Source of the DNA: Macrostomum hystrix
Lineage: Eukaryota; Animalia; Platyhelminthes
Assembly: GCA_950097015.1 (NCBI GenBank)
Contig: CATNEN010000034.1
Span: 682,001-746,000, forward strand
DNA: 64,000 bases
Reading direction: 5' to 3'
Made by a program: the position numbers and the translations under genes. The notes beneath the pieces were generated by a model. That model was given only the letters and a program-made list of their open reading frames with translations. It searched no databases and was not told the origin of the DNA. This document shows, in pieces, positions 27,301 through 40,850 of this stretch (the first letter of the stretch is position 1; every line of letters begins with the position of its first letter).

Positions 27301-27430
27301 CAAAATAGTATGAAAGTGGTTTACAAAAAAACTTGTAGAACTGATTTCAGGGATTTTTGTTCTTTGTGTTCAATGTATATACAAGTCCTTTTGAACATTT
27401 CAGAGCATATAAACAGTTAATTTTTCTGCA

Positions 27431-27616
27431 ATGTCTGGCCCAGCTGCCTCTTTGAGGATGATCAAGTCTGGTCTATGCCTGGCTCGTTGTCTGTCACAGG
27501 TGCCGAGGACATTGAGCACAGTTTCGAAGCATTTTCTAAATCTGCAGCAGTCAAGTAGGATGGTTGGCAAAACCTGTGTCTCAGGTCGCACCCAAAGGTT
27601 TTCTGTGTCGCACCAG
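27431..27616 (+). CDS. Proposed upstream exon encoding a mitochondrial presequence, probably of the peroxiredoxin
   Basis: 62 codons (MSGPAASLRMIKSGLCLARC...GRTQRFSVSHQ) with 6 Arg, 3 Lys, 11 Ser and no Asp/Glu. Donor CAG|GTAGGT in phase 0 matches the Prx acceptor at 37492. Confidence 0.55.
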
Positions 27617-27822
27617 GTAGGTTCTTAAATAGCGATTCGCTTAACATTTTCCTGATACTCTACTAGCAGTAGCCGATTTCAACCAATGCGCTGTCGAACT
27701 TTCTAGAACATTCATTATGCACTTTTTTAACTGCAACTGGTCAGGGCGCTTAAGCAATTTTTTTTGCTATGCAAAGTAGTAAGTTGTCTCATTGCTTGAT
27801 AGGACATTTCTTTGTAATGAAA

Positions 27823-27975
27823 GAAGTTGCAGCCTAGTGGTTAGAGCGTTAGACTCACGACTTTAAGGCCAGGGGTTCGTTTCCTACTGACAGCTGTTCG
27901 CTCTGACAGCTGTACACAGCCTTCAGATACGCCATAGCTACGGCTGTACTGTCGGCTGCTCATCTGGCCTGATTG
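27823..27975 (+). mobile_element. tRNA-derived SINE, internally deleted copy
   Basis: GTTGCAGCCTAGTGGTTAGAGCGTTAGACTCACG...GGGGTTCGTTTCC head and CAGCCTTCAGAT...GCTGTACTGTCGGCTGCTCATCTGG tail match the 48610-48915 copy. Confidence 0.75.
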
Positions 27976-29978
27976 GAGCATAAATGATTACCGACTAGCC
28001 TTAATGGGTAGGTTTGAGTTTGACTAATACTATGCTCAGAACTTAGGCATCGGTATGTTATAACAAAGTACTTTCAATTAAAATACTTTCTGTACTTTAC
28101 TAGCGGATTTCGAGGACTCAGTGTCAGAAGCTCTCAGACAGAAGTATACTATATCCCAGCTGCAATGACCGCCGTTAAGCGATGTAAGCATAGATAAAAG
28201 TTGGCTAATTTCATTTCGATGTCGACGGTCTACCGTTTAAATAAGTGAACGCTAAAACATTATTTTTTCCGAACCCCACTTTCTGTACTCTCGTTTTTTT
28301 CGTAAGGGAGGCTGCAAACCCGCCTATGTGTACACTGAGAGTGAATGTACAGTCTAGGGGTGCGGTGTTATTTGGACCCTTTCTATTTAGGCTGAGGCTT
28401 AAGCTAAAGTCTGGGGGTGGAGGTGGGGTGGGTGAGCCGTGGGTTTGGAGAAAAGAAGGGCCTCCTCACCAAGGCCAACCCCAAACGGCCAAGGTTTCAT
28501 TGGGTTGAATTCCACTAAACAGACAAACGTGCTTCGTCCGCTCATTTTGTGACACAGCGGAACTCCTGAATAAATATTAACAGATTTTGCTAGTGCTGCG
28601 CTGTTACTGTCTCTCACTCGAATCGATATCAAGCCTTACTCCACCTGTTCAATTCTTTATCGTTGGCTAAGGCAGACTTATTCCTCCCTTCGGTTTGAGT
28701 TTTTTGTCCCCAAAAGTGATATCTTTTTTAAGCAAAAAAGCAAACGGTAAGTTGCGAAGCACTTTTATTTATGTTTAATAAGATATCATTAAAAATGTTT
28801 AGCTTAGGTGTGGCATCAATTAATTATTGAATTTTTTCTCTCGACTTGCTACTGCTAAGCACAGTAAGCACTAAACAGAATGAAAAGAAAGGTTATGCTT
28901 GCTTTTAGCAGTCATCGCTCCTTTAGGAATATTTTACTTATTATAAATTTGTTGTACTTGCACGTTTTCTTATGCCAGATCATGGAACGACTGTTTATTT
29001 ACCCAGTTTAACTATTACCAGAGTCTAACATTTTGTAGTTTTGGGGCCTTAATTGTTAAGCAGAATTATTATAGCAAAAGTTATTGATGGTCATAATTCT
29101 ATTATTAACATACTTATGAGTCTCAGAGTCTTGGCACATATGCATAGATTAGGTAAAATATAATGTAACAAATTTAATTTGAAGCTTTTAGAAAACAATG
29201 ATTATATGCCTAATTTATTCTCAGTCTATATCTTATATCTACTTGCATGTTTTAACTTGTCTAATTTACATTATAAAACATTTAAATTGTGTCAGAAAGT
29301 GTGTCGAAAAATGGTCAGACAACAAAGAAGGCCTCAAATGTAAAATCCTATTTAATATATTTTCTCTTTATTATGCTCACCTGTTAAAACTGGTAGATGA
29401 CTGTTAAGTTTTCCTTGCCACTGGCACAGATGCACACCAGATGTTTCACATAGAATAGACTCCCTGTTTCACATAAACCTTTCTACTTACACATCAGCGA
29501 GTTGGATTACACAGATAATATATTATGACTACCAGCTGTCTGTTGGGTCTCTTCCATTTTCTAAAATGCTTTGAACATTCATGTCTCTTGTATCTATCTG
29601 ACAGATCTTGTGTAGTTCCAATTCTATAAACAAAAAAGTGATGCCAGAATAATTTCTAATTTGCTATAGAACATAGTCCTCAACCCTTTCTTGGGTTCGT
29701 CGCTTTTTGTCGGTTGATAAACTCTACTTGAAGTAGTGTGATTATCATGTTTGGGTTTCCTCGAAAAATATATTTGAATTTTTTTTAAACAGTATTTGGC
29801 ACCCTCAGATTCAATCCAATTGGTCAACGAAGTTGGGGTTGTAGCCAAAGGATTCCTATAAATTCTCAATTGAGGATTTGGAAAGAAAATAAGATTTATA
29901 CACTGCCGATTCGCCTACAACTTCCCGAAAGAAAATTTGTTGAAAAAACAGCAGCTCGCATCCTGAAATAGTGCCACA

Positions 29979-30419
29979 ATGAGCTGCCGACCAGTGAAGC
30001 AGGACTCGCGCGACTCCAGCTCCGAGCGACACGTGTCCTTCTCGCCGGCAGTCCGCAGTCCGCCTAGTCATCGTCGACCTCCGCCCTCTCCGGTGCCGCC
30101 CGAAATGGCAGCGGCAGCCTCCTCGGCCTCTGGAGCCACTGGCGACGGCCATTTGCATCCAGTGAGCCTCTTGGAGCATCCGGAATGCTCGCTAGTGATT
30201 CCCTGCCCTGTGGCCCGAGCTTGCCCAGTTGCTAAGCAACAGCGGCGCCGCGAAGAAGGCGAAGGCGAGGAGGGCTACAGCGAGGGTGACGGTGACGATG
30301 AAGTTGTCTTGCTGATGGATAACAACGACAGAGCTGCAACAGCTGGCGATGGGGAAAAGGGTCTGGTTGCACAGCTTCTGCGTGGCCTCGTTCAGCAGCT
30401 GCAGCTGGCGGAGCCGGCG
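29979..30419 (+). CDS. First coding exon of an uncharacterised protein with a PP1-docking-like RHVSF motif
   Basis: GC-rich exon in AT-rich surroundings. Acceptor GAAATAG 7 nt before the ATG and donor GCG|GTGAGG at 30420. Pro-rich and acidic segments. A possible phase-0 second exon starts at 35372. Confidence 0.5.
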
Positions 30420-30455
30420 GTGAGGAGCTGCGTGTCGTCTGGCAGGTTGCAATGG

Positions 30456-31480
30456 CCTTCAGGTTCCTTTGGACCATGCCACCTTCAGGTTCCTTCAGAC
30501 CATGCCACCTTCAGGTTCCTTCATACCATGCCACCTTCAGGTTCCTTCATACCATGCCACCTTCAGGTTCCTTCAGACCATGCCACCTTCAGGTTCTTCC
30601 ATACCATGCCACCTTCAGGTTCTTCCATACCATGCCACCTTCAGGTTCCTTCAGACCATGCCACCTTCAGGTTCCTTCAGACCATGCCACCTTCAGGTTC
30701 TTCCATACCATGCCACCTTCAGGTTCTTTTAGACCATGCCACCTTCAGGTTCCTTCAGACCATGCCACCTTCAGGTTCCTTCATACCATGCCACCTTCAG
30801 GTTCCTTCATACCATGCCACCTTCAGGTTCCTTCAGACCATGCCACCTTCAGGTTCCTTCATACCATGCCACCTTCAGGTTCCTTCAGACCATGCCACCT
30901 TCAGGTTCTTCCATACCATGCCACCTTCAGGTTCTTTTAGACCATGCCACCTTCAGGTTCCTTCAGACCATGCCACCTTCAGGTTCCTTCATACCATGCC
31001 ACCTTCAGGTTCCTTCATACCATGCCACCTTCAGGTTCCTTCAGACCATGCCACCTTCAGGTTCCTTCATACCATGCCACCTTCAGGTTCCTTCAGACCA
31101 TGCCACCTTCAGGTTCTTCCATACCATGCCACCTTCAGGTTCCTTCATACCATGCCACCTTCAGGTTCTTTTAGACCATGCAACCTTCAGGTTCTTTCAA
31201 ACCATGCCACCTTCAGGTTCCTTCAGACCATGCCACCTTCAGGTTCCTTCATACCATGCCACCTTCAGGTTCCTTCAAACCAAGCCACCTTCAGGTTCTT
31301 TTAGACCATGCCACCTTCAGGTTCTTTTAGACCATCCCACCTTCAGGTTCTTTTAGACCATGCCACCTTCAGGTTCTTTTAGAACATACCAACTTCAGGT
31401 TCTTTCAAACCAAGCCACCTTCAGGTTCTTTTAGACCATGCCACCTTCAGGTTCCTTCGGTCCTTGTCACCCTTCGGTCC
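30456..31480. repeat. 26-bp minisatellite (ACCATGCCACCTTCAGGTTCCTTCAG)
   Basis: About 38 units with variable 3' halves, starting about 36 nt after the donor at 30420. Confidence 0.96.
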
Positions 31481-32771
31481 TTAAAAAAACCTTTAGGTTC
31501 CTACTTGCTTTCTATGTTCTGTATTTCAAACGAAAAATGTGCACAGTTCATTAACCATTCAGCAACCTTTTTTATCATTTGCAAAAGACTTCCAAAAGAT
31601 TTCCAAAAGATTATTCAAAAACAGTATCTGTTTCGTTCAGGATGCACGCTTAATGGCGTGCATTCGCGTGTTCCTATCGCTTTGTACTTTGGTCTTTGCT
31701 GTGCTTATCAAATAACTTACCGACTACTGACTTAAGGTTCACCCGAAGCGAGGCAGAGTGACCAGGGGAAATGGGAAAATGTAAATCAGCCCAGCTCTGG
31801 GTAACCCTGCCAAGAGAGAAAGGGAGAAGAATTACGAATGGAGGCGAACAGACGTCCGGATTAAGGCACTGGCAAGGATTATCGCAATCAGCTTTCTTGG
31901 CCGTAGCTAGATCCCTAATTCGGGTCCCAGCTGGCCAATCGCCGGTATCCCTTTGCTCTCAAACGCGTGCCCCATTCGCCTCCTGTTGTTAATTGAATCG
32001 GGCCCGGGCCGGACTAGACAGAATGCTCCGCCGCCTCGAAAGTGTCCGATTGAGGCCCATTGCGGGCAGGGGAGTCGGCGGTGTCGGCTTCGAGTGGTGT
32101 CCAGAGCGGCTGAAGCCACTCTCCCAATGCATCATATCCTCGCCTTCTCTCTCCGCGCCGGCTCCTTCCTCTTCCAGTTTTTTTTCGCCCTCGCCTTTGC
32201 ATTAGCTCTTACTCTCTTCCTGCCTCTCCCTGGCCTTCCGCTTCATTCAGCTCCTTTACTTCCCCGTGCATTATTAGTCCTCTGCAACCCTGACCTAGTG
32301 TGTTCGCCAGGCTTTCTTAACAGTAAACAGCTGGTTTTCCATCAGGATTAGCCTTACCTGCTTACTCAAGTTAGCTCCATTTTCCGACCATCTAGGCCAA
32401 TAGATGAAAAGGCGAAAATGGGTATAGAAAATATATTCGGACAAAGAGAGGGAATAGAGCCTGTCATGGTATCGCGTGCTGGCCCCACTAATTCCCATTT
32501 GCTTTCCTCTTCTCCTTTTCGCCAGGCCATCTTGGTGCCTAATTGAGAGAGGGGAGAGAGAGCACTCAGCACCGTCAAGTCTCATTCGCACACTGCATGC
32601 TTCAGGGTGTAATATAGTTGCTAAGGAGAGAGTTTTCCTTTCTAAACCGATTGCTATTCATTCTATCCTTCCCTCACTTTTGATTGGCTTTGAGTCCTGC
32701 TCACACAGAAAGTTTTTTCTCTCTTTTGTGTCGCCGTTTGCCGTCCCGGGCTCAACTACCCATTCAGCTAA

Positions 32772-32860
32772 TAATAATTAATAATAATTGCAGGAGGGCT
32801 GCGGGCAATGGCACATCATTTGGTGACCATAGACCCACAGCCAGCGAGAAGGAAATTCTG
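32772..32860 (-). mobile_element. 3' end of a non-LTR retroelement or SINE with (ATT)n tail, copy 1
   Basis: TGCAGGAGGGCTGCGGGCAATGGCACATCATTTGGTGAC preceded by an (AAT)n tract, shared with 52612-52705. Confidence 0.55.
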
Positions 32861-33862
32861 TCTATTTCGCTGACTCCTGAGCACACACGCACACAGATAC
32901 TGTACGCATGCATGCAACTTTCTCATCGTCAGGCAGTGTACACTCTCAATGTGCCTTGAAGATTGGCCCTCAAGGGCGTAAATTGCACGACAAGCCCCCG
33001 AGCCTTCTCTCCGCGGCTGCGCCCCAAATGAATCTGGCCTCGCGCGCGGAGTCGAGCTCAGGGACCTTGGTGTGAGAGGCAAACGCTTTAACCGCTCTGC
33101 CACCGACTCCCCACCCATTCCGCTAGTAGGATGCCATCCTTTTGTGTACTAGTTGCAAATATTTTCCTTTCATTCCGCGCTCCTTCAATGCTTCACTTCA
33201 TATTCTGTATGGTCCTGCACTGAGGAACTTTAATTAGGAACTATCTTGTCTATTCAAGTGAGGAAGGCGAAATGTTGTAATATGCAAAAAATGGAAATGA
33301 GGTGACACATCCTTACCGTGAAGTGCGTGGTGCATAGCAAAGCCAGACTATGTCGAAGTCAAGTGAGCCGCACAATGTCTCCTCTACGCCAAAGAGTAGA
33401 CACTACTAGAAGCCATGGTTTAGGTTATTCACGCGCTCTCAAAGCAGTTATTTTTTACGGATAGAAAGTCCTATCTCTTCATTATCTTATTCGATTTCCT
33501 CTTTCAAACGGAGCGCTTATGGATCTGAAGAAGATCTAAATAAAAGCCGCTGGTATTATTTTCACGAATTTAGTCAGCATCTGGATGCCGCAATTAAAAA
33601 GCTGTCAGATAGCAAAGAGTGATAGAGCGTGCACTTTTACGTTTGACGATAAGTAGACAGTCCCTGAATAGATAGGACGTCAATTCGACTTTATTTTAAT
33701 TAACGCGTTTTAATATTGTGCTACGCATATAATTTTATCGAAATATGTCGATTTGCTGCGATTCAATCACAATGGCGTTCTTTCAATTGGAAGTTTTTTA
33801 TTGCAAAATATCTTTTGCAAAACGCATAAATAGCTAATTATGCGCTCAGAGCCCTCCATTAT

Positions 33863-35354
33863 GCCTGTGACAGTGAGGAATGGGGGACTGAGCAGAGCCT
33901 GTGACAGTGAGGAATGGGGGGGCTGAGCAGAGCCTGTGACAGTGAGGAATGGGGGACTGAGCAGAGCCTGTGACAGTGAGGAATGGAGGGCTGAGCAGAG
34001 CCTGTGACAGTGAGGAATGGGGGGCCGAGCAGAGCCTGTGACAGTGAGGAATGGGGGACTGAGCAGAGCCTGTGACAGTGAGGAATGGAGGGCTGAGCAG
34101 AGCCTGTGACAGTGAGGAATGGAGGGCTGAGCAGAGCCTGTGACAGTGAGGAATGGAGGGCTGAGCAGAGACTGACAGTGAGGAATGGGGGACTGAGCAG
34201 AGCCTGTGACAGTGAGGAATGGAGGGCTGAGCAGAGCCTGTGACAGTGAGGAATGGAGGGCTGAGCAGAGCCTGTGACAGTGAGGAATGGAGGGCTGAGC
34301 AGAGCCTGTGACAGTGAGGAATGGGGGGCTGAGCAGAGCCTGTGACAGTGAGGAATGGGGGGGCTGAGGAGAGCCTGTGAAAGTGAGGAATGGAGGGCTG
34401 AGCGGAGACTGACAGTGAGGAATGGGGGGCTGAGCAGAGCCTGTGACAGTGAGGAATGGAGGGCTGAGCAGAGCCTGTGACAGTGAGGAATGGAGGGCTG
34501 AGCAGAGCCTGTGACAGTGAGGAATGGAGGGCTGAGCAGAGACTGACAGTGAGGAATGGGGGACTGAGCAGAGCCTGTGACAGTGAGGAATGGAGGGCTG
34601 AGCAGAGCCTGTGACAGTGAGGAATGGAGGGCTGAGCAGAGACTGACAGTGAGGAATGGGGGACTGAGCAGAGCCTGTGACAGTGAGGAATGGAGGGCTG
34701 AGCAGAGCCTGTGACAGTGAGGAATGGAGGGCTGAGCAGAGCCTGTGACAGTGAGGAATGGAGGGCTGAGCAGAGCCTGTGACAGTGAGGAATGGGGGGC
34801 TGAGCAGAGCCTGTGACAGTGAGGAATGGGGGGGCTGAGGAGAGCCTGTGAAAGTGAGGAATGGAGGGCTGAGCGGAGACTGACAGTGAGGAATGGGGGG
34901 CTGAGCAGAGCCTGTGACAGTGAGGAATGGAGGGCTGAGCAGAGCCTGTGACAGTGAGGAATGGAGGGCTGAGCAGAGCCTGTGACAGTGAGGAATGGAG
35001 GGCTGAGCAGAGACTGACAGTGAGGAATGGGGGACTGAGCAGAGCCTGTGACAGTGAGGAATGGAGGGCTGAGCAGAGCCTGTGACAGTGAGGAATGGAG
35101 GGCTGAGCAGAGCCTGTGACAGTGAGGAATGGAGGGCTGAGCAGAGCCTGTGACAGTGAGGAATGGGGGGCTGAGCAGAGCCTGTGACAGTGAGGAATGG
35201 GGGGGCTGAGGAGAGCCTGTGAAAGTGAGGAATGGAGGGCTGAGCGGAGACTGACAGTGAGGAATGGGGGGCTGAGCAGAGCCTGTGACAGTGAGGAATG
35301 GAGGGCTGAGCAGAGCCTGTGACAGTGAGATATGGTGGGCCGAGCAGAGCCTGT
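33863..35354. repeat. 34-bp minisatellite (GAGCAGAGCCTGTGACAGTGAGGAATGGAGGGCT), array 1
   Basis: About 44 units with a recurring diagnostic variant pair at about 34367, 34838 and 35208. Confidence 0.97.
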
Positions 35355-35616
35355 TGACTACTTGACTACAGAGTGCATCGGCCCGAGCGGGGAGGCGTAA
35401 AGGACCGCCCTTTTCACTGGCCCCTGGCAACCAGACGATCTCTGATGAGGTGGTGTTGCTCAGGGGACCCACCGTCTCCTGCAGCACGCTCCTCCTCACC
35501 AGCATGAGTGGGGAAGGAGTCAGTTTGTCTGCGGCGTCCCTCAGGACGCTTCTAACCGGGCAAGCAGCGGGGCAGAGGTTTAGTCCAAGATATTTTAACC
35601 TTGCCTTGGAAACTAC
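35355..35616 (-). mobile_element. Short copy of the unique segment also at 40133-40400, probably the 3' end of a LINE
   Basis: Near-identical to 40133-40400 apart from a 10-bp indel and a few substitutions. Minus frame SKARLKYLGLNL aligns with STKARLERLGLNL of the longer copy. Confidence 0.55.
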
Positions 35617-37492
35617 TTACTTTATTTCAGTAAGAAAGATCTGCAAAGTTTTATTTGCTCGTATTATTCAATGACGTACTCGTAGTTTTTCTCAAATCCA
35701 GTAGTTATGTAATCAATGGGAAGCTAGAATAAATAATTATTCTACTCTTATTCTACTCTAATTCTACGAGTATAAAAAAGACTCATTAATTCATTCCATG
35801 AATGTAACATCGCTACAGGATAGAGTGAAAACAGATGTTCAGTGATAAGGGCATACTGTAGCTAAATTGTATGCCTCAGAATGCGGTGAGACTGAGCAGC
35901 TGAGGCCTCAGATAATGTGTGCGCCATCAGCTCATAGGCAACGTTTAGTGCAGCGGTGGGCTGAGCATAGCTATAAAATAGGCGCTAAACACATTTCCAG
36001 CATAAATAATTCAACAATGCTCATTTTGGGACGTCATTAATCTCCCTTTTCGTGTCAGCTTCTTGTTGGCTGCTCTTGTTGCCTCCTCAATCAACTCCTG
36101 TCAGGCTCCTGTTTTGCGTTTTGCCCAACTGTTCAAAGTCACATTTGCTGAGTTTGTTGATGCAAACTTTGTGTTGCAGCTTTGTCGATAGTGAAATAGT
36201 GAAAGCAGCTCTTCGCAAGTCCAAATCCCTCACATCGATGGCTTCTAAGCGATTGCGTCCATCTAGAAGATTATCTATGTCGTCCCAATTCCCATGCTGA
36301 CGGATTATTATGGTTCCATGTCGAGACATTCGACGCAATATTTCAAAACTTGCAAAATACAAACAGGATGGAAAGATTCTTCGGCAAAAATCATACCACG
36401 AATTTCAACTCGTCGTGTTTGCGTGCTAGGCCACAAGCCTGTTGCCGAGTTCTAGCGAGTTTATTGTAAACTGAAAATACTTTGCCCGCCAGACTAAAGC
36501 TGCTCTGATTGGATTGTATCGGTTTTTTTAATGAAATGGCAGCTTTAAGCTTCCCTGCGTACTCGAGGGCAATCGGAATTGCATCGTGGTAGAATTCGAT
36601 GTAGTAGTAACTAGGATATATTTTTTAAGAGAATTGCTTATATCCGAGGCCTGCTTGAGCAGGCGCCGAGACATACAATCAAATGCAATCTCATAAGTCG
36701 CTCAACCGTATTGCCATGCATCGTTCGCATCGCACATTTTAATATCCCTTCACGATTGATCCCATTTCTATCTTTTCCTCTAGCTACCTCGTTCTACTGT
36801 CCATCTATCTCTCCAGATGGGATTCTGAAATCCTCCTAGTTTTTCGCACGGATTAGGTACAACTCAGCTCAAATGAACTCAAATGCACACAGAAAGTCCC
36901 GATGGAATGGGGAAAGCGATTGAGTTCGCTTCACAAGGGAGATCGACTCCTGGCCTACTTGCTCCTCATTTTCTTTCCTGACTCTCTTGATTTTCCTATT
37001 GGCCAGTTTTTTACCTCCGTCTGTGCATCTTTCCTGTCCTATGTTGCTTTAATTAATATCCGTAGCTTCACCATGCACACCTTGGGCGAGAGTAGAAATA
37101 TCCCCTTTTTGATTGCAGTTTCTTCGAAATTGCTACATAGAAATCCCATTTCTGAGGATTCGTTGCCCGTGGGGCTCAAAAGGAATTAGCTATAATCTGC
37201 CACTTGCAGCGTACAGGGTGGAATAAGCTGCAGTCCCAGTCTGAAACTTCTGGTGAATTTTGGTTGAAAAATAAGCGCCACAATTGTACGGAAATTCGGA
37301 TTCGCAGTGAAATAAGTTCTTCTGAATAGCCTAAATACAAGTACAACTTTAAAAAAGGTTTTTGCCCGATTTAAACTCTGTGGCAACTCGGAATTTATGA
37401 TAGGGAACGATTTGGTTTTCTACAAAACATTCATGTGGGAGAGAAAATAAACTACTTTGTTTCCAGTAATTCTTTCCGCAATGATCCCGCAG

Positions 37493-38107
37493 CTGTACAG
37501 CAAGGACCAAATGGCCGCCACAGTTCCCCAGCAACTGTTGCCGGGCTCTCCGGCGCCTAACTTCACTGGCAAAGCTGTGATGCCGGACCAGTCATTCGCT
37601 GACATCAGCCTCGCCGACTACCGCGGCAAATACGTGGTCCTGTTCTTCTATCCGGCCGACTTCACCTTCGTGTGCCCCACCGAGATCATCGCCTTCTCCG
37701 ACCGGGCCGAGGAGTTCCGCAAGGCCAACTGCGAGCTGGTCGCCTGCAGCACCGACACGCACTTTGTCCACCTGGCCTGGACCAACACGGCTCGCAAGGA
37801 CGGAGGACTCGGCCGCCTCAACATGCCCCTGCTGGCCGATCCGTCCCACGCCATCAGCCGCGCCTACGGTGTGCTGAAGGGCGACGAAGGCATCGCCTTC
37901 CGCGGCCTCTTCGTCATCAACGAGAAAGGCCAGCTGCGCCAGATCACCATCAACGACCTACCAGTTGGCCGCTCAGTTGACGAGACCCTGCGCCTGGTGC
38001 AGGCATTCCAGTTCACTGACAAGCACGGCGAGGTCTGCCCGGCCAACTGGAAGCCGGGCGGCAAGACCATGAAGCCCGACCCCGTCAATAGCAAGGACTA
38101 CTTCAAG
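37493..38107 (+). CDS. PRDX: Typical 2-Cys peroxiredoxin (Prx1/AhpC subfamily), main exon; internal Met at 37511
   Basis: [15 protein letters not shown] (peroxidatic Cys), GGLG, RGLFVIN, and [11 protein letters not shown] (resolving Cys). Acceptor ATCCCGCAG at 37492 and donor AAG|GTGGGC at 38108. Confidence 0.95.
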
Positions 38108-38267
38108 GTGGGCTGTTTCTCAGATCTTTGCATCCCAAAATTATCCCACCTTAGGATCCGCCTCCAAAATCCCAAATTATCTTCCCGAAAACCCACCTTT
38201 ATCCATTTGGAAATCTATATTGATCATCTAATAACATATTTAATAAGAAAAGCGATCGCCCTACCAG

Positions 38268-39094
38268 ATCCCCAGATTATCCCATCGCCCTACCAGATCC
38301 ACATATTATCTCATCACCCTACCAGATCCCCATATTATCTCATTACCCTACCAGATCCCCATATTATCTCATCACCCTACCAGATCCCCATATTATCCCA
38401 TCACACTATCAGATCCACAGATTATCCCATCTCCCTACCCTACCAGATCCCCAGTTGATCTCATCACCCTACCAGATCCCCAGTTGATCCCATCACCCTA
38501 CCAGATCCCCAGTTGATCCCATCACCCTACCAGATCCCCATATTATCCCATCACCCTACCAGATCCCCAGTTGATCTCATCACCCTACCAGATCCCCAGT
38601 TGATCCCATCACCCTACCAGATCCCCAGTTGATCCCATCACCCTACCAGATCCCCATATTATCCCATCACCCTACCAGATCCCCAGTTGATCTCATCACC
38701 CTACCAGATCCCCAGTTGATCTCATCACCCTACCAGATCCACAGATTATCCCATCACCCTACCAGATCCCCAGTTGATCTCATCACCCTACCAGATCCAC
38801 AGATTATCCCATCACCCTACCAGATCCCCAGTTGATCTCATCACCCTACCAGATCCACAGATTATCCCATCACCCTACCAGATCCCCAGTTGATCTCATC
38901 ACCCTACCAGATCCACAGATTATCCCATCACCCTACCAGATCCCCAGTTGATCTCATCACCCTACCAGATCCACAGATTATCCCATCACCCTACCAGATC
39001 CCCAGTTGATCTCATCACCCTACCAGATCCACAGATTATCCCATCACCCTACCAGATCCCCAGTTGATCTCATCACCCTACCAGATCCACAGAT
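38268..39094. repeat. 29-bp minisatellite (CATCACCCTACCAGATCCCCAGTTGATCC) filling the last Prx intron
   Basis: About 28 units with alternating variants, ending about 60 nt before the acceptor at 39154. Confidence 0.95.
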
Positions 39095-39154
39095 GATCTC
39101 AGCTATCAAATTTGCACAATTTAACTCCGCGATCCTGACCGCTTGTTATTTCAG

Positions 39155-39163
39155 TCTGTCTGA
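39155..39163 (+). CDS. PRDX: Peroxiredoxin terminal coding micro-segment (SV-stop)
   Basis: Acceptor TTATTTCAG followed by TCT GTC TGA gives the C-terminus SKDYFKSV*, normal for Prx length. AATAAA at 39321-39326. Confidence 0.7.
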   Translation, partial: SV

Positions 39164-39576
39164 ACGCCAGACCGCAAGGCATCTCAGCAGAGGCACATTT
39201 AGTTTTCGGTGCCCGTCTGATGCAACTGGCCTATCTGCCATAGACGGCTCATATTTTCTTTTCAACAATTTAACTTTTATCATTTTTAGGCGATTTTGTT
39301 TAAGAAAGTCATAATCCAACAATAAACTAATTTCCCTATGCTGGAGCTATAAATCATGGTCTGACGTATCGCTTATCGCTATTTTTCGCACGAATAATCT
39401 TTCCAGCTGTCCGTTTTTCTGGTTTCGAAGCTAAATAAACGAACATAAATTGTTACTAACCGCAGTTTAGTTCATAAATTTCATCGATGACTTAGTTATC
39501 ATAGCCAAATACATTTTTGTTTTTAATTGGATTGTTTTTTCTTTTACCATGGAATAATAAATATCTTCGATTTTGT

Positions 39577-40132
39577 GAGCAGAGCCTGTGAAAGTGAGGA
39601 ATGGAGGGCTGAGCAGAGCCTGTGACAGTGAGGAATGGAGGGCTGAGCAGAGCCTGTGACAGTGAGGAATGGAGGGCTGAGCAGAGCCTGTGACAGTGAG
39701 GAATGGAGGGCTGAGCAGAGCCTGTGACAGTGAGGAATGGAGGGCTGAGCAGAGCCTGTGTCAGTGAGGAATGGAGGGCTGAGCAGAGCCTGTGACAGTG
39801 AGGAATGGAGGGCTGAGCAGAGCCTGTGAAAGTGAGGAATGGAGGGCTGAGCAGAGCCTGTGAAAGTGAGGAATGGAGGGCTGAGCAGAGCCTGTGACAG
39901 TGAGGAATGGAGGGCTGAGCAGAGCCTGTGACAGTGAGGAATGGAGGGCTGAGCAGAGCCTGTGACAGTGAGGAATGGGGGGGCTGAGGAGAGCCTGTGA
40001 AAGTGAGGAATGGAGGGCTGAGCGGAGACTGACAGTGAGGAATGGGGGGCTGAGCAGAGCCTGTGACAGTGAGGAATGGAGGGCTGAGCAGAGCCTGTGA
40101 CAGTGAGATATGGAGGGCCGAGCAGAGCCTGT
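39577..40132. repeat. 34-bp minisatellite, array 2 (same family as 33863-35354)
   Basis: About 16 units, with the same variant pair at about 39987. Confidence 0.97.
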
Positions 40133-40850
40133 TGACTACTTGACTACAGAGTGCATCGGCCCGAGCGGGGAGGCGTAAAGGACCGCCCTTTTCACTGGCC
40201 CCTGGCAACCAGACGATCTCTGATGAGGTGGTGTTGCTCAGGGGACCCACCGTCTCCTGCAGCACGCTCCTCCTCACCAGCATGAGTGGGGAAGGAGTCA
40301 GTTTGTCTGCGGCGTCCCTCAGGACGCTTATAACCGGGCAAGCAGCGGGGCAGACGTCAGAGAGGTTTAGTCCAAGACGTTCTAACCTTGCCTTCGTGGA
40401 GACTGGGCAGGGGCAGAAATATTGTTCCGCATTTCCCCTGGCCACTTGCAGAAAGGGTCACCGCTCCGCTCCTGGCTGGAGGAAAAGGTGTGACGGGACT
40501 AGCAGTCTATAAGGGCCCTGCTGATCGTCGCTCGGAGGTATCGGCCATTGAGCTTCAGGAGGCTATGGGTGTTGGTCCGACTTTCCTGGTGTTTTTATTC
40601 CATCCCAGGGTCTTCACTCTAACGCAGATGACGGAGGGTGGGATGGGAGCCCATAATTCCGGGCCTCTTGCGAGCTGGTTCACCTGGTTTCCAGGAAAGC
40701 CCGCGTGGCCAGGTATACCTAAGCAGAGCCCGTGAAAGTGAGTTATGATGGGATAAACGCAAAGCCTACTACTCATCGCCAGAAACTTTTTTAAGTACTT
40801 TAACTGTGGTTCAGCTCTTGTCGTGCAATTAGCGATGTTCGGCACCAATT
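40133..40850 (-). mobile_element. Degraded 3' portion of an RNase H-containing LINE (I/R1/LOA-type group)
   Basis: Minus frame LGIPGHAGFPGNQVNQLARG (40661-40740) resembles the RNase H motif WxPGHxGxxGNExAD. Downstream DPFCKW / GNAEQYFCPCPVSTKARLERLG resembles the terminal CxxC...ETxxHxxCxCP...RxxxLG motif. Broken by frameshifts and stops. Confidence 0.6.

What the first reader, a model, noticed from the sequence alone, without database searches (positions are those of the whole stretch)
27431..39163. One peroxiredoxin gene may encode both mitochondrial and cytosolic enzymes through a distant presequence exon
Seen: an isolated 62-codon ORF at 27431-27616 has 9 basic residues, 11 Ser, no acidic residues, ends RFSVSHQ, and finishes at a phase-0 donor. 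It joins in frame to the Prx acceptor at 37492, giving ...[19 protein letters not shown]..., and the Prx exon has its own Met at 37511. It is out of phase with the intervening gene at 29979 (phase-2 acceptor). An inverted CCAAT box at 36505-36512 could mark a second, proximal promoter. Established: mitochondrial Prx3 proteins carry a presequence of about this length and composition, and animals usually use separate Prx1/2 and Prx3 genes. Inference: alternative first exons across a 9.9-kb intron give two compartment-specific isoforms.
Basis: partly seen in the sequence, partly recalled or inferred. Interest (0 to 1): 0.75.

Follow-up and report, generated by a model that had tools for sequence, protein, structure and literature searches.

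The report
Flatworm peroxiredoxin with two first exons
A Macrostomum flatworm peroxiredoxin gene makes two messenger RNAs from two far-upstream first exons, one adding a mitochondrial-type leader and one giving the plain enzyme, a well-known way of serving two cell compartments that is here applied to a Prx1/2-type enzyme.

Summary
The window comes from a Macrostomum flatworm.

- **Long form.** RNA contigs from four public runs (two studies) join the 62-codon exon (27431-27616) exactly to the peroxiredoxin exon at 37493. M. lignano and a third Macrostomum species carry the same presequence-Prx fusion. The product is 269 aa.
- **Short form.** One run also holds a second abundant 5' form. A non-coding exon ending at 28746 (donor ACG|GTAAGT) joins the same acceptor. 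It has no ATG and an in-frame TAA, so translation starts at Met 37511. The product is 201 aa.
The second first exon lies only 1.1 kb downstream of the presequence exon. It is not at the proposed proximal CCAAT site near 36505, where no joined transcript was seen. No spliced leader was seen at 37493 either.
- **The leader.** It has 9 Lys/Arg, no acidic residues and 11 Ser. It contains an amphipathic stretch and is conserved in three species. This is typical of mitochondrial presequences, but import was not tested.
- **The enzyme.** It is Prx1/2-type, not a PRDX3 orthologue.

The mechanism matches PRDX5, GPX4, GLRX2 and flatworm TGR, so this is a new member of a known kind.

The parts
27378..27616 (+). 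Exon 1a. It holds the 5' UTR and the 62-codon presequence (ATG at 27431) and ends at the phase-0 donor CAG|GTAGGT (GT at 27617-27618). The 5' limit is only the reach of the longest contig.
   Evidence: Loose ends of 235-236 letters before 37490 in X1 and X3, whose last 30 letters equal 27584-27613. It is 47% identical in protein and 64% in DNA to the M. lignano exon at L001 10025-10213.
28609..28746 (+). Exon 1b, an alternative non-coding first exon. It has no ATG, carries an in-frame TAA at 28729-28731, and ends at the donor ACG|GTAAGT (GT at 28747-28748). The 5' limit is inferred from the contig length, assuming the contig is colinear with the genome.
   Evidence: An X12 contig of 167 nt (depth 267) has 137 letters ahead of 37492 that end GTGATCTCTTTTTTAAGCAAAAAAGCAAAC. 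This matches 28716-28745 at 29 of 30 letters and occurs once in the window, with 0 expected by chance.
28570..28576 (+). TATA-like ATAAATA, about 33-39 nt upstream of the inferred 5' end of exon 1b. It is a candidate core promoter for the short-form mRNA (inference only).
   Evidence: Read directly. There is no functional test.
37493..38107 (+). Exon 2, the whole peroxiredoxin body (205 codons). The shared acceptor AG is at 37491-37492 and a minor acceptor gives an exon start at 37500. The short-form start codon is at 37511-37513, in the context accaaATGg.
   Evidence: Pfam AhpC-TSA 4.7e-40 plus 1-cysPrx_C 1.3e-14. Contigs of four runs cover 37490-38107 with 0-1 mismatches. A minor X12 contig joins exon 1b at 37500 with depth 6.
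38108..39154 (+). Last intron. It is mostly filled by a 29-bp minisatellite at 38255-39098.
   Evidence: The loose ends behind 38107 read TCTGTCTGAACGCCAGACC..., which equals 39155 onwards, in all four runs.
39155..39409 (+). Exon 3. It holds the last two codons (Ser-Val), the stop at 39161-39163 and the 3' UTR. AATAAA motifs lie at about 39321 and 39434. The 3' limit is approximate.
   Evidence: Junction 38107^39155 is seen in X1, X2, X3 and X12, with loose ends up to 255 letters.

Best explanation
This is a typical 2-Cys peroxiredoxin gene of the Prx1/2 type in a Macrostomum flatworm. It has two alternative first exons, both far upstream of a single shared acceptor at 37493.

**Exon 1a (ATG at 27431).** It adds a 62-residue leader in frame. 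The leader is basic, free of acidic residues and rich in Ser and Thr. The product is a 269-aa precursor that is most likely imported into mitochondria and trimmed there.

**Exon 1b (ends at 28746).** It is non-coding, with no ATG and an in-frame stop. Ribosomes therefore start at Met 37511 and make a 201-aa enzyme with a normal Prx1/2 N-terminus, which should stay in the cytosol.

Which first exon is used sets how much enzyme goes to each compartment. The most likely control is choice between two promoters 1.2 kb apart.

**Shown:** both junctions, the reading frames, conservation of the leader in three species, and the Prx1/2 affinity of the enzyme.

**Inferred:** the two localisations, the separate promoter for exon 1b, and regulation of the isoform ratio.
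For: - **Exon 1a junction.** Junction 27616^37493 appears in contigs of X1, X2, X3 and X12, from two studies. In X1-X3 a single contig of 891-1184 nt runs exon 1a, exon 2 and exon 3 without a break.
- **Exon 1b junction.** In X12 a second contig (depth 267) joins a sequence matching 28716-28745, followed in the genome by G|GTAAGT, to the same acceptor. The exon 1a junction contig has depth 147 and the shared body 358. A minor exon 1b variant uses the acceptor at 37500.
- **Coding potential.** Exon 1b has no ATG and a TAA 15 nt before its end. The first AUG of that mRNA is 37511.
- **Leader composition.** 9 Lys/Arg, 0 Asp/Glu, 11 Ser. The amphipathic moment is reached by only 1-4% of shuffles. 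No hydrophobic core of signal-peptide strength is present. The values resemble the presequence of a protein named mitochondrial PRDX3 (P0004) and differ from the N-terminal extensions of several other invertebrate Prx isoforms.
- **Leader conservation.** M. lignano P0122 and RNA contig L002 carry it at 47% identity, with zero acidic residues in all three, a single whole-codon indel, and the same intron position and phase.
- **Enzyme identity.** AhpC-TSA and 1-cysPrx_C domains. The motifs FVCPTE, GGLG, EVCPA and YF are visible in the translation.
- **Enzyme type.** Bit scores against solved structures are PRDX1 324, PRDX2 294, PRDX4 277 and PRDX3 261. All five Macrostomum Prx sequences form one clade with 100/100 support among Prx1/2-type proteins.
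Against: - Localisation was not tested, and no trained predictor (TargetP, MitoFates) was available.
- The exon 1b form was seen in one run only (X12). In X1-X3 the contigs pass from exon 1a into exon 2 unbranched, so the short form may be rare or conditional there.
- Only the last 30 of the 137 upstream letters of the exon 1b contig were shown. Its 5' end and its own promoter are therefore inferred.
- Contig depths are crude.
- No exon 1b equivalent could be recognised in M. lignano by DNA similarity. All M. lignano database entries are the long form.
- Macrostomum has other short Prx1/2 paralogues (P0005, P0006), so a cytosolic form from this gene is not strictly needed.
Confidence: 0.75

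Rival explanations
1. The 62-residue extension is not a mitochondrial presequence. It could be another kind of N-terminal tail, such as a different targeting signal or a regulatory or tethering segment. In that case the two isoforms differ in something other than mitochondrial versus cytosolic location.
For: No localisation data and no trained predictor were available. At 62 residues, with three Cys, it is at the long end for presequences. No clean R-2/R-3 cleavage motif could be assigned with confidence.
Against: All three species have zero acidic residues, a net charge of +6 to +9, about 25% Ser+Thr and a significant amphipathic stretch. There is no signal-peptide-grade hydrophobic core (maximum 9-residue Kyte-Doolittle mean 1.47). 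The composition nearly matches the presequence of a named mitochondrial PRDX3.
Confidence: 0.12
2. The short form is produced mainly by another route. The candidates are a proximal promoter just upstream of exon 2, spliced-leader trans-splicing onto the acceptor at 37493, or leaky scanning to Met 37511 on the long mRNA. The leader's terminal AUG would be in frame at that acceptor.
For: About 30% of M. lignano genes receive a 35-nt leader ending in ATG (PMC8629364). The acceptor is phase 0, so that ATG would read ATG-CTG-TAC... in frame. Contig assemblies drop rare variants and break at highly shared sequences such as a spliced leader.
Against: In X12 the assembly graph at the acceptor shows only two predecessors, exon 1a and exon 1b, plus the minor 37500 variant of exon 1b. 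No leader-like loose end and no contig running colinear from upstream genomic sequence into 37493 was seen. The only contigs upstream, at 35750-36521 and 37006-37176, have depth 5-6 and are not joined to the exon.
Confidence: 0.08
3. Exon 1b transcripts are a by-product without a separate protein role. For example, exon 1b could be the 5' exon of the nested gene at 29979 that occasionally splices to the strong Prx acceptor. The gene would then be functionally a mitochondrial Prx only.
For: The exon 1b form was seen in one study only. Exon 1b lies 1.2 kb upstream of a conserved nested ORF on the same strand. Other paralogues can supply cytosolic Prx.
Against: In X12 the exon 1b junction contig is deeper (267) than the exon 1a junction contig (147). 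A second, minor splice variant also uses exon 1b. The resulting mRNA has a clean 5' UTR without upstream AUGs and a well-placed AUG.
Confidence: 0.05

Closest known systems
Human PRDX5, with long mitochondrial and short cytosolic/peroxisomal forms from one gene (PMC3759418)
   Same: One peroxiredoxin gene gives a presequence-bearing long form and a short form that starts at a downstream in-frame AUG. The choice is made at the 5' end of the mRNA.
   Different: PRDX5 is an atypical 2-Cys Prx of another subfamily. Its two AUGs lie in the same exon and are selected by alternative transcription start sites. Here two separate first exons 1.1 kb apart are each spliced across 9-10 kb to a common acceptor.
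Flatworm thioredoxin glutathione reductase (TGR), with mitochondrial and cytosolic variants from a single gene (Agorio et al. 2003, as cited in PMC6155587 and PMC9220675)
   Same: Same phylum and same redox pathway. Alternative 5' ends of one gene add or omit a mitochondrial leader.
   Different: In Echinococcus the alternative mRNAs are reported to arise through trans-splicing. Here both 5' exons are cis-spliced from the same locus, and no spliced leader was seen at the shared acceptor.
Vertebrate PRDX3, the dedicated mitochondrial typical 2-Cys Prx (for example P0004, or PDB 5JCG and 1ZYE)
   Same: A typical 2-Cys Prx with an N-terminal presequence of about 50-60 residues and very similar composition.
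   Different: The Macrostomum enzyme is closer to PRDX1/2 (324 and 294 bits) than to PRDX3 (261 bits). It groups with short Macrostomum Prx1/2 paralogues. PRDX3 is not known to make a cytosolic form from an alternative first exon (my own knowledge).
Mammalian GLRX2 and GPX4, with alternative first exons or start sites giving mitochondrial and cytosolic/nuclear isoforms (my own knowledge; not checked in a paper here)
   Same: The same logic of alternative first exons in thiol-redox enzymes.
   Different: They are different protein families. No flatworm or Prx1/2-type case was found in the literature searches.

Membership tests
Typical 2-Cys peroxiredoxin (Prx1/AhpC subfamily) | AhpC-TSA thioredoxin-fold domain plus the C-terminal Prx domain | tested here: met
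   PF00578 at 4.7e-40 (136.8 bits) and PF10417 at 1.3e-14.
Typical 2-Cys peroxiredoxin (Prx1/AhpC subfamily) | Peroxidatic Cys in the DFTFVCPTE motif and resolving Cys in the GEVCPA motif | tested here: met
   The translation of exon 2 contains ...[13 protein letters not shown]... and ...[10 protein letters not shown]....
Typical 2-Cys peroxiredoxin (Prx1/AhpC subfamily) | GGLG and C-terminal YF motifs of the eukaryotic 'sensitive' type | tested here: met
   KDGGLGRLN and KDYFK are present. Their meaning for hyperoxidation comes from my own knowledge.
PRDX3 orthologues (ancestral mitochondrial 2-Cys Prx) | Mature domain closer to PRDX3 than to PRDX1/2/4 | tested here: not met
   PDB bit scores are PRDX1 324, PRDX2 294, PRDX4 277 and PRDX3 261. 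The tree places it with short Macrostomum paralogues inside Prx1/2-type sequences at 100/100. Caveat: only one PRDX3 row was included, it is a flawed model, and no invertebrate Prx3 was available.
PRDX3 orthologues (ancestral mitochondrial 2-Cys Prx) | N-terminal mitochondrial presequence | tested here: inconclusive
   The composition and amphipathicity fit. No predictor or import assay was available.
Dual-compartment genes using alternative first exons (GLRX2/GPX4/TGR type) | Two different 5' exons joined to one common acceptor in mature RNA | tested here: met
   Exon 1a is joined in 4 runs and exon 1b in 1 run, both at 37493.
Dual-compartment genes using alternative first exons (GLRX2/GPX4/TGR type) | Only one 5' exon supplies an in-frame targeting peptide, and the other mRNA starts at a downstream AUG | tested here: met
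   Exon 1b has no ATG and an in-frame TAA. Its first AUG is 37511.
Dual-compartment genes using alternative first exons (GLRX2/GPX4/TGR type) | The two proteins are found in two compartments | not testable with these tools
   This needs fractionation, imaging or import assays.
Spliced-leader-dependent isoform switching (Echinococcus TGR type; SL-AUG genes noted elsewhere in this genome) | Spliced leader joined at the isoform-defining acceptor | tested here: inconclusive
   No leader-like loose end was seen at 37493 in four runs of contigs. However, contigs cannot show absence.

The most novel reading that the evidence does not exclude
Macrostomum, and perhaps flatworms more widely, may lack a canonical PRDX3. 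They would then have re-invented the mitochondrial typical 2-Cys peroxiredoxin by attaching a new presequence exon to a lineage-specific Prx1/2 paralogue. A second first exon 1.1 kb away would be kept so that promoter choice tunes how much of one enzyme goes to mitochondria versus cytosol. In the runs seen here the share ranges from nearly all long form (X1-X3) to about one third long form (X12).
Probability: 0.3. Interest if true: 0.55.

Novelty: new member of a known kind. Interest (0 to 1): 0.4.

Why it matters
- **A clear worked example.** This is a transcript-verified case of how a cytosolic-type antioxidant enzyme can also be supplied to mitochondria by adding one small upstream exon. 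It occurs in a regeneration and ageing model genus in which redox biology is studied.
- **A warning on names.** Annotation by similarity alone ('peroxiredoxin 1' or 'thioredoxin peroxidase') hides the compartment. The M. lignano database entries are all the long form and carry no such note.
- **An evolutionary question.** If Macrostomum has no PRDX3 orthologue, this would be a convergent replacement of the mitochondrial Prx.
- **Limits.** The mechanism itself is familiar from PRDX5, GPX4, GLRX2 and flatworm TGR. A specialist would find this a tidy case rather than a surprise.

Tried and rejected
1. **Proximal promoter near 36505.** Rejected. No contig starts there and joins exon 2. The only upstream contigs are at low depth and unjoined.
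2. **Spliced-leader trans-splicing at 37493.** This was my first rival, because the genus trans-splices about 30% of its genes. No leader was seen at the acceptor. It is not excluded.
3. **First read-laying request (33401-39400).** I repeated it on the repeat-free part, 35600-38240.
4. **Origin of the presequence.** A word search restricted to the M. lignano presequence (P0122, residues 1-70) found only itself. No donor gene was identified. The large representative search was not spent on this.
5. **Exon 1b in M. lignano.** Sensitive blastn found nothing. The exon is non-coding and the introns of the two species do not align.
6. **M. lignano RNA contigs.** Exact look-ups of the long and short forms (P0122, P0123 and their residues 71-268) found nothing on record.
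7. **Other invertebrate 'isoform X1' Prx extensions** (Mercenaria, Palaemon, ticks, Watersipora). These are mostly not presequence-like, so they are not evidence that the design is widespread.
8. **The joined protein model.** Exons were searched separately by reference. The only joins were local frame checks inside one script. That script translated exon 1b followed by the first 48 nt of exon 2.
Full report
**What the window is.** The single-exon peroxiredoxin body at 37493-38107 matches Pfam AhpC-TSA (4.7e-40) and the Prx C-terminal domain. Its best database relative is a Macrostomum lignano protein at 93% identity (P0001). No identical protein is on record. The coding DNA is 88% identical to the M. 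lignano locus and the introns do not align. The window therefore comes from a Macrostomum flatworm other than the M. lignano reference assembly. Earlier notes of this scan on the same genome also call it Macrostomum.

**Checking the observation.**
- The ORF at 27431-27616 codes 62 residues with 6 Arg, 3 Lys, 11 Ser and no Asp or Glu. It ends RFSVSHQ at a phase-0 donor, CAG|GTAGGT.
- An in-frame stop six codons upstream makes 27431 the first usable ATG.
- The acceptor ...tcccgcag|CTG places the exon start at 37493. The frame reads LYSKDQ then MAATVP, with Met at 37511.
- Exon 2 ends at 38107. A last exon from 39155 adds Ser-Val-stop, with the stop at 39161-39163.

**The presequence exon really is spliced to the Prx exon.**
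- I laid the contigs of four runs that hold the Prx exon on 35600-38240.
- In all four runs (X1-X3 of one study, X12 of another) a contig covers 37490-38107 with 0-1 mismatches. It continues upstream with GGTCGCACCCAAAGGTTTTCTGTGTCGCAC.
- That sequence, with the shared CAG, occurs exactly once in the window, at 27584-27616.
- The same contigs continue downstream of 38107 with TCTGTCTGAACGCC..., which is 39155 onwards.
- In X1-X3 a single contig of 891-1184 nt runs exon 1a, exon 2 and exon 3.
- These spliced forms show that the runs are RNA, although their records do not say so.

**Independent support from relatives.**
- M. lignano entries P0001, P0121 (276 aa, partial) and P0122, P0123 (268 aa) begin MSVSVASFRAMRSGLCLTRCLTQLPRSMSTV...IQQFSVSNQ-LANKPDQ-MSAQQLLPG.
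- The genomic locus L001 has the same layout. The presequence exon ends at CAG|GTAGGT, an 8.3-kb intron follows, and the acceptor is cccag|CTAGCT.
- A Logan RNA contig of a third species (L002, SRR28338165) runs from a homologous presequence straight into the Prx exon in frame. The gene caller had named only the inner 198 aa because the contig is cut at its 5' end.
- The three leaders are 47% identical to the window's. They share the blocks SGLCLxRCLxQxPR and RxQxFSVSxQ, differ by one whole-codon indel, and contain no acidic residue.
- The exon is alignable at 64% DNA identity while the flanking introns are not. This argues for selection on the coding sequence.

- In X12 the acceptor has a second predecessor. 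It is a 167-nt contig (depth 267) whose 137 upstream letters end GTGATCTCTTTTTTAAGCAAAAAAGCAAAC.
- This matches 28716-28745 at 29 of 30 letters. It is the only match in the window, with none expected by chance.
- The genome continues G|GTAAGT, a consensus donor, so the junction is 28746^37493.
- A minor contig (depth 6) joins the same exon to an AG seven bases further on, giving an exon start at 37500.
- If the contig is colinear with the genome, exon 1b spans about 28609-28746. A TATA-like ATAAATA sits 33-39 nt upstream. That is an inference, not a test.
- Exon 1b has no ATG and carries a TAA in the Prx frame 15 nt before its end. The first AUG of this mRNA is therefore 37511, in the context accaaATGg. 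The protein is 201 aa and aligns with ordinary Prx1/2 N-termini.
- In X12 the assembly graph at the acceptor has just these inputs. The exon 1a junction contig has depth 147 and the shared body 358.
- No contig runs from unspliced upstream DNA into 37493, and none carries a spliced-leader-like end.
- The two contigs upstream (35750-36521 and 37006-37176) have depth 5-6 and are not joined.
- The inverted CCAAT near 36507 exists but has no support as a promoter.
- Contigs cannot prove absence. A rare trans-spliced form remains possible, and the leader's ATG would be in frame at 37493.

**Is the leader mitochondrial?** This step is inferred.
- The leader has net charge +9, no acidic residues and 24% Ser+Thr.
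- It has an 18-residue stretch (ARCLSQVPRTLSTVSKHF) whose helical hydrophobic moment is reached by 1% of shuffles. The M. lignano and L002 leaders behave the same way.
- Its strongest 9-residue hydrophobicity (1.47) is below what a secretory signal needs.
- Its figures are close to those of the presequence of a protein named mitochondrial PRDX3 (P0004: 6 basic, 0 acidic, 25% Ser+Thr). The N-terminal extensions of several other invertebrate Prx 'isoform X1' models are acidic or short.
- No trained predictor was available.

**What kind of Prx.**
- Against solved structures the exon scores PRDX1 324 bits, PRDX2 294, PRDX4 277 and PRDX3 261.
- In a maximum-likelihood tree of 25 rows, the window, the M. 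lignano long form and the third species form a clade (98/91). That clade is sister to two short M. lignano paralogues, and all five group at 100/100 inside protostome Prx1/2-type sequences.
- The tree held only one PRDX3 row, which is a flawed gene model on a long branch, and no invertebrate Prx3.
- The statement 'not a PRDX3 orthologue' is therefore well indicated but not rigorous.
- Whether Macrostomum also has a true PRDX3 was not testable here.
- A word search with the M. lignano presequence alone (P0122, residues 1-70) found no other protein sharing it.

**Comparison with what is known.**
- One gene serving mitochondria and cytosol through its 5' end is established for human PRDX5. There, alternative start sites select between two in-frame AUGs (PMC3759418).
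- It is also established for flatworm thioredoxin glutathione reductase, the enzyme that ultimately feeds peroxiredoxins (Agorio et al. 2003, as cited in PMC6155587 and PMC9220675).
- From my own knowledge the same holds for GPX4 and GLRX2.
- Parasitic flatworms are described as having three separate Prx genes.
- My literature searches found no report of a Prx1/2-type gene using alternative first exons for this purpose, and nothing on Macrostomum Prx isoforms.
- I file it as a new member of a known kind.

**Verdict.** The transcript architecture is shown directly: two first exons, one acceptor, and one coding leader. The compartment assignment is a strong inference. Interest is moderate.

Noticed in passing
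window 29979-30421 (+); L001 12884-13310: A conserved protein-coding exon lies inside the big Prx intron on the same strand. It reads MSCRP..KQDSRDSSSERHVSFSP..RSPPSHRRPPPSPVPP...HLHPVSLLEHPECS..LLRGxxQQLQL. It is 62% identical to M. lignano, its indels are whole codons, it has no Pfam match, and it ends at a likely donor GCG|GTGAGG. It is probably the first exon of a nested gene of unknown function. Whether exon 1b also serves it as a 5' exon is open.
   Followed up: partly
window 30456-31458: A 26-bp minisatellite (38.6 copies, 92% matches) directly follows the nested exon. It reads open in all three frames, which inflates the ORF at 29979 to 441 aa. The long ORF is not a gene.
   Followed up: yes
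window 34801-35607 and 39576-40394: A direct repeat about 820 bp long and 96% identical brackets Prx exons 2-3. It consists of a 34-bp minisatellite (33863-35354 and 39576-40132) plus about 250 bp of unique flank. It could be a repeat-bearing mobile element or a local duplication.
   Followed up: partly
window 38255-39098: A 29-bp minisatellite (28.9 copies) fills most of the last Prx intron. M. lignano has a different microsatellite-like repeat in the corresponding intron (the (CAGA)n-like ORFs at L001 19170-20111).
   Followed up: no
window 35750-36521 and 37006-37176: Run X12 holds low-depth contigs (5-6) colinear with intron sequence. The first has 4 mismatches in 772 nt. They may be pre-mRNA, an unrelated low-level transcript or DNA carry-over. 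They also show that the X12 animals differ from the reference by about 0.5% in non-coding DNA.
   Followed up: no
runs X1-X3 versus X12, at 37493: The isoform mix appears to differ between studies. X1-X3 have unbranched exon 1a-to-exon 2 contigs. In X12 the exon 1b junction contig is deeper than the exon 1a one. This could reflect tissue, condition or strain, but contig depth is too crude to say.
   Followed up: no
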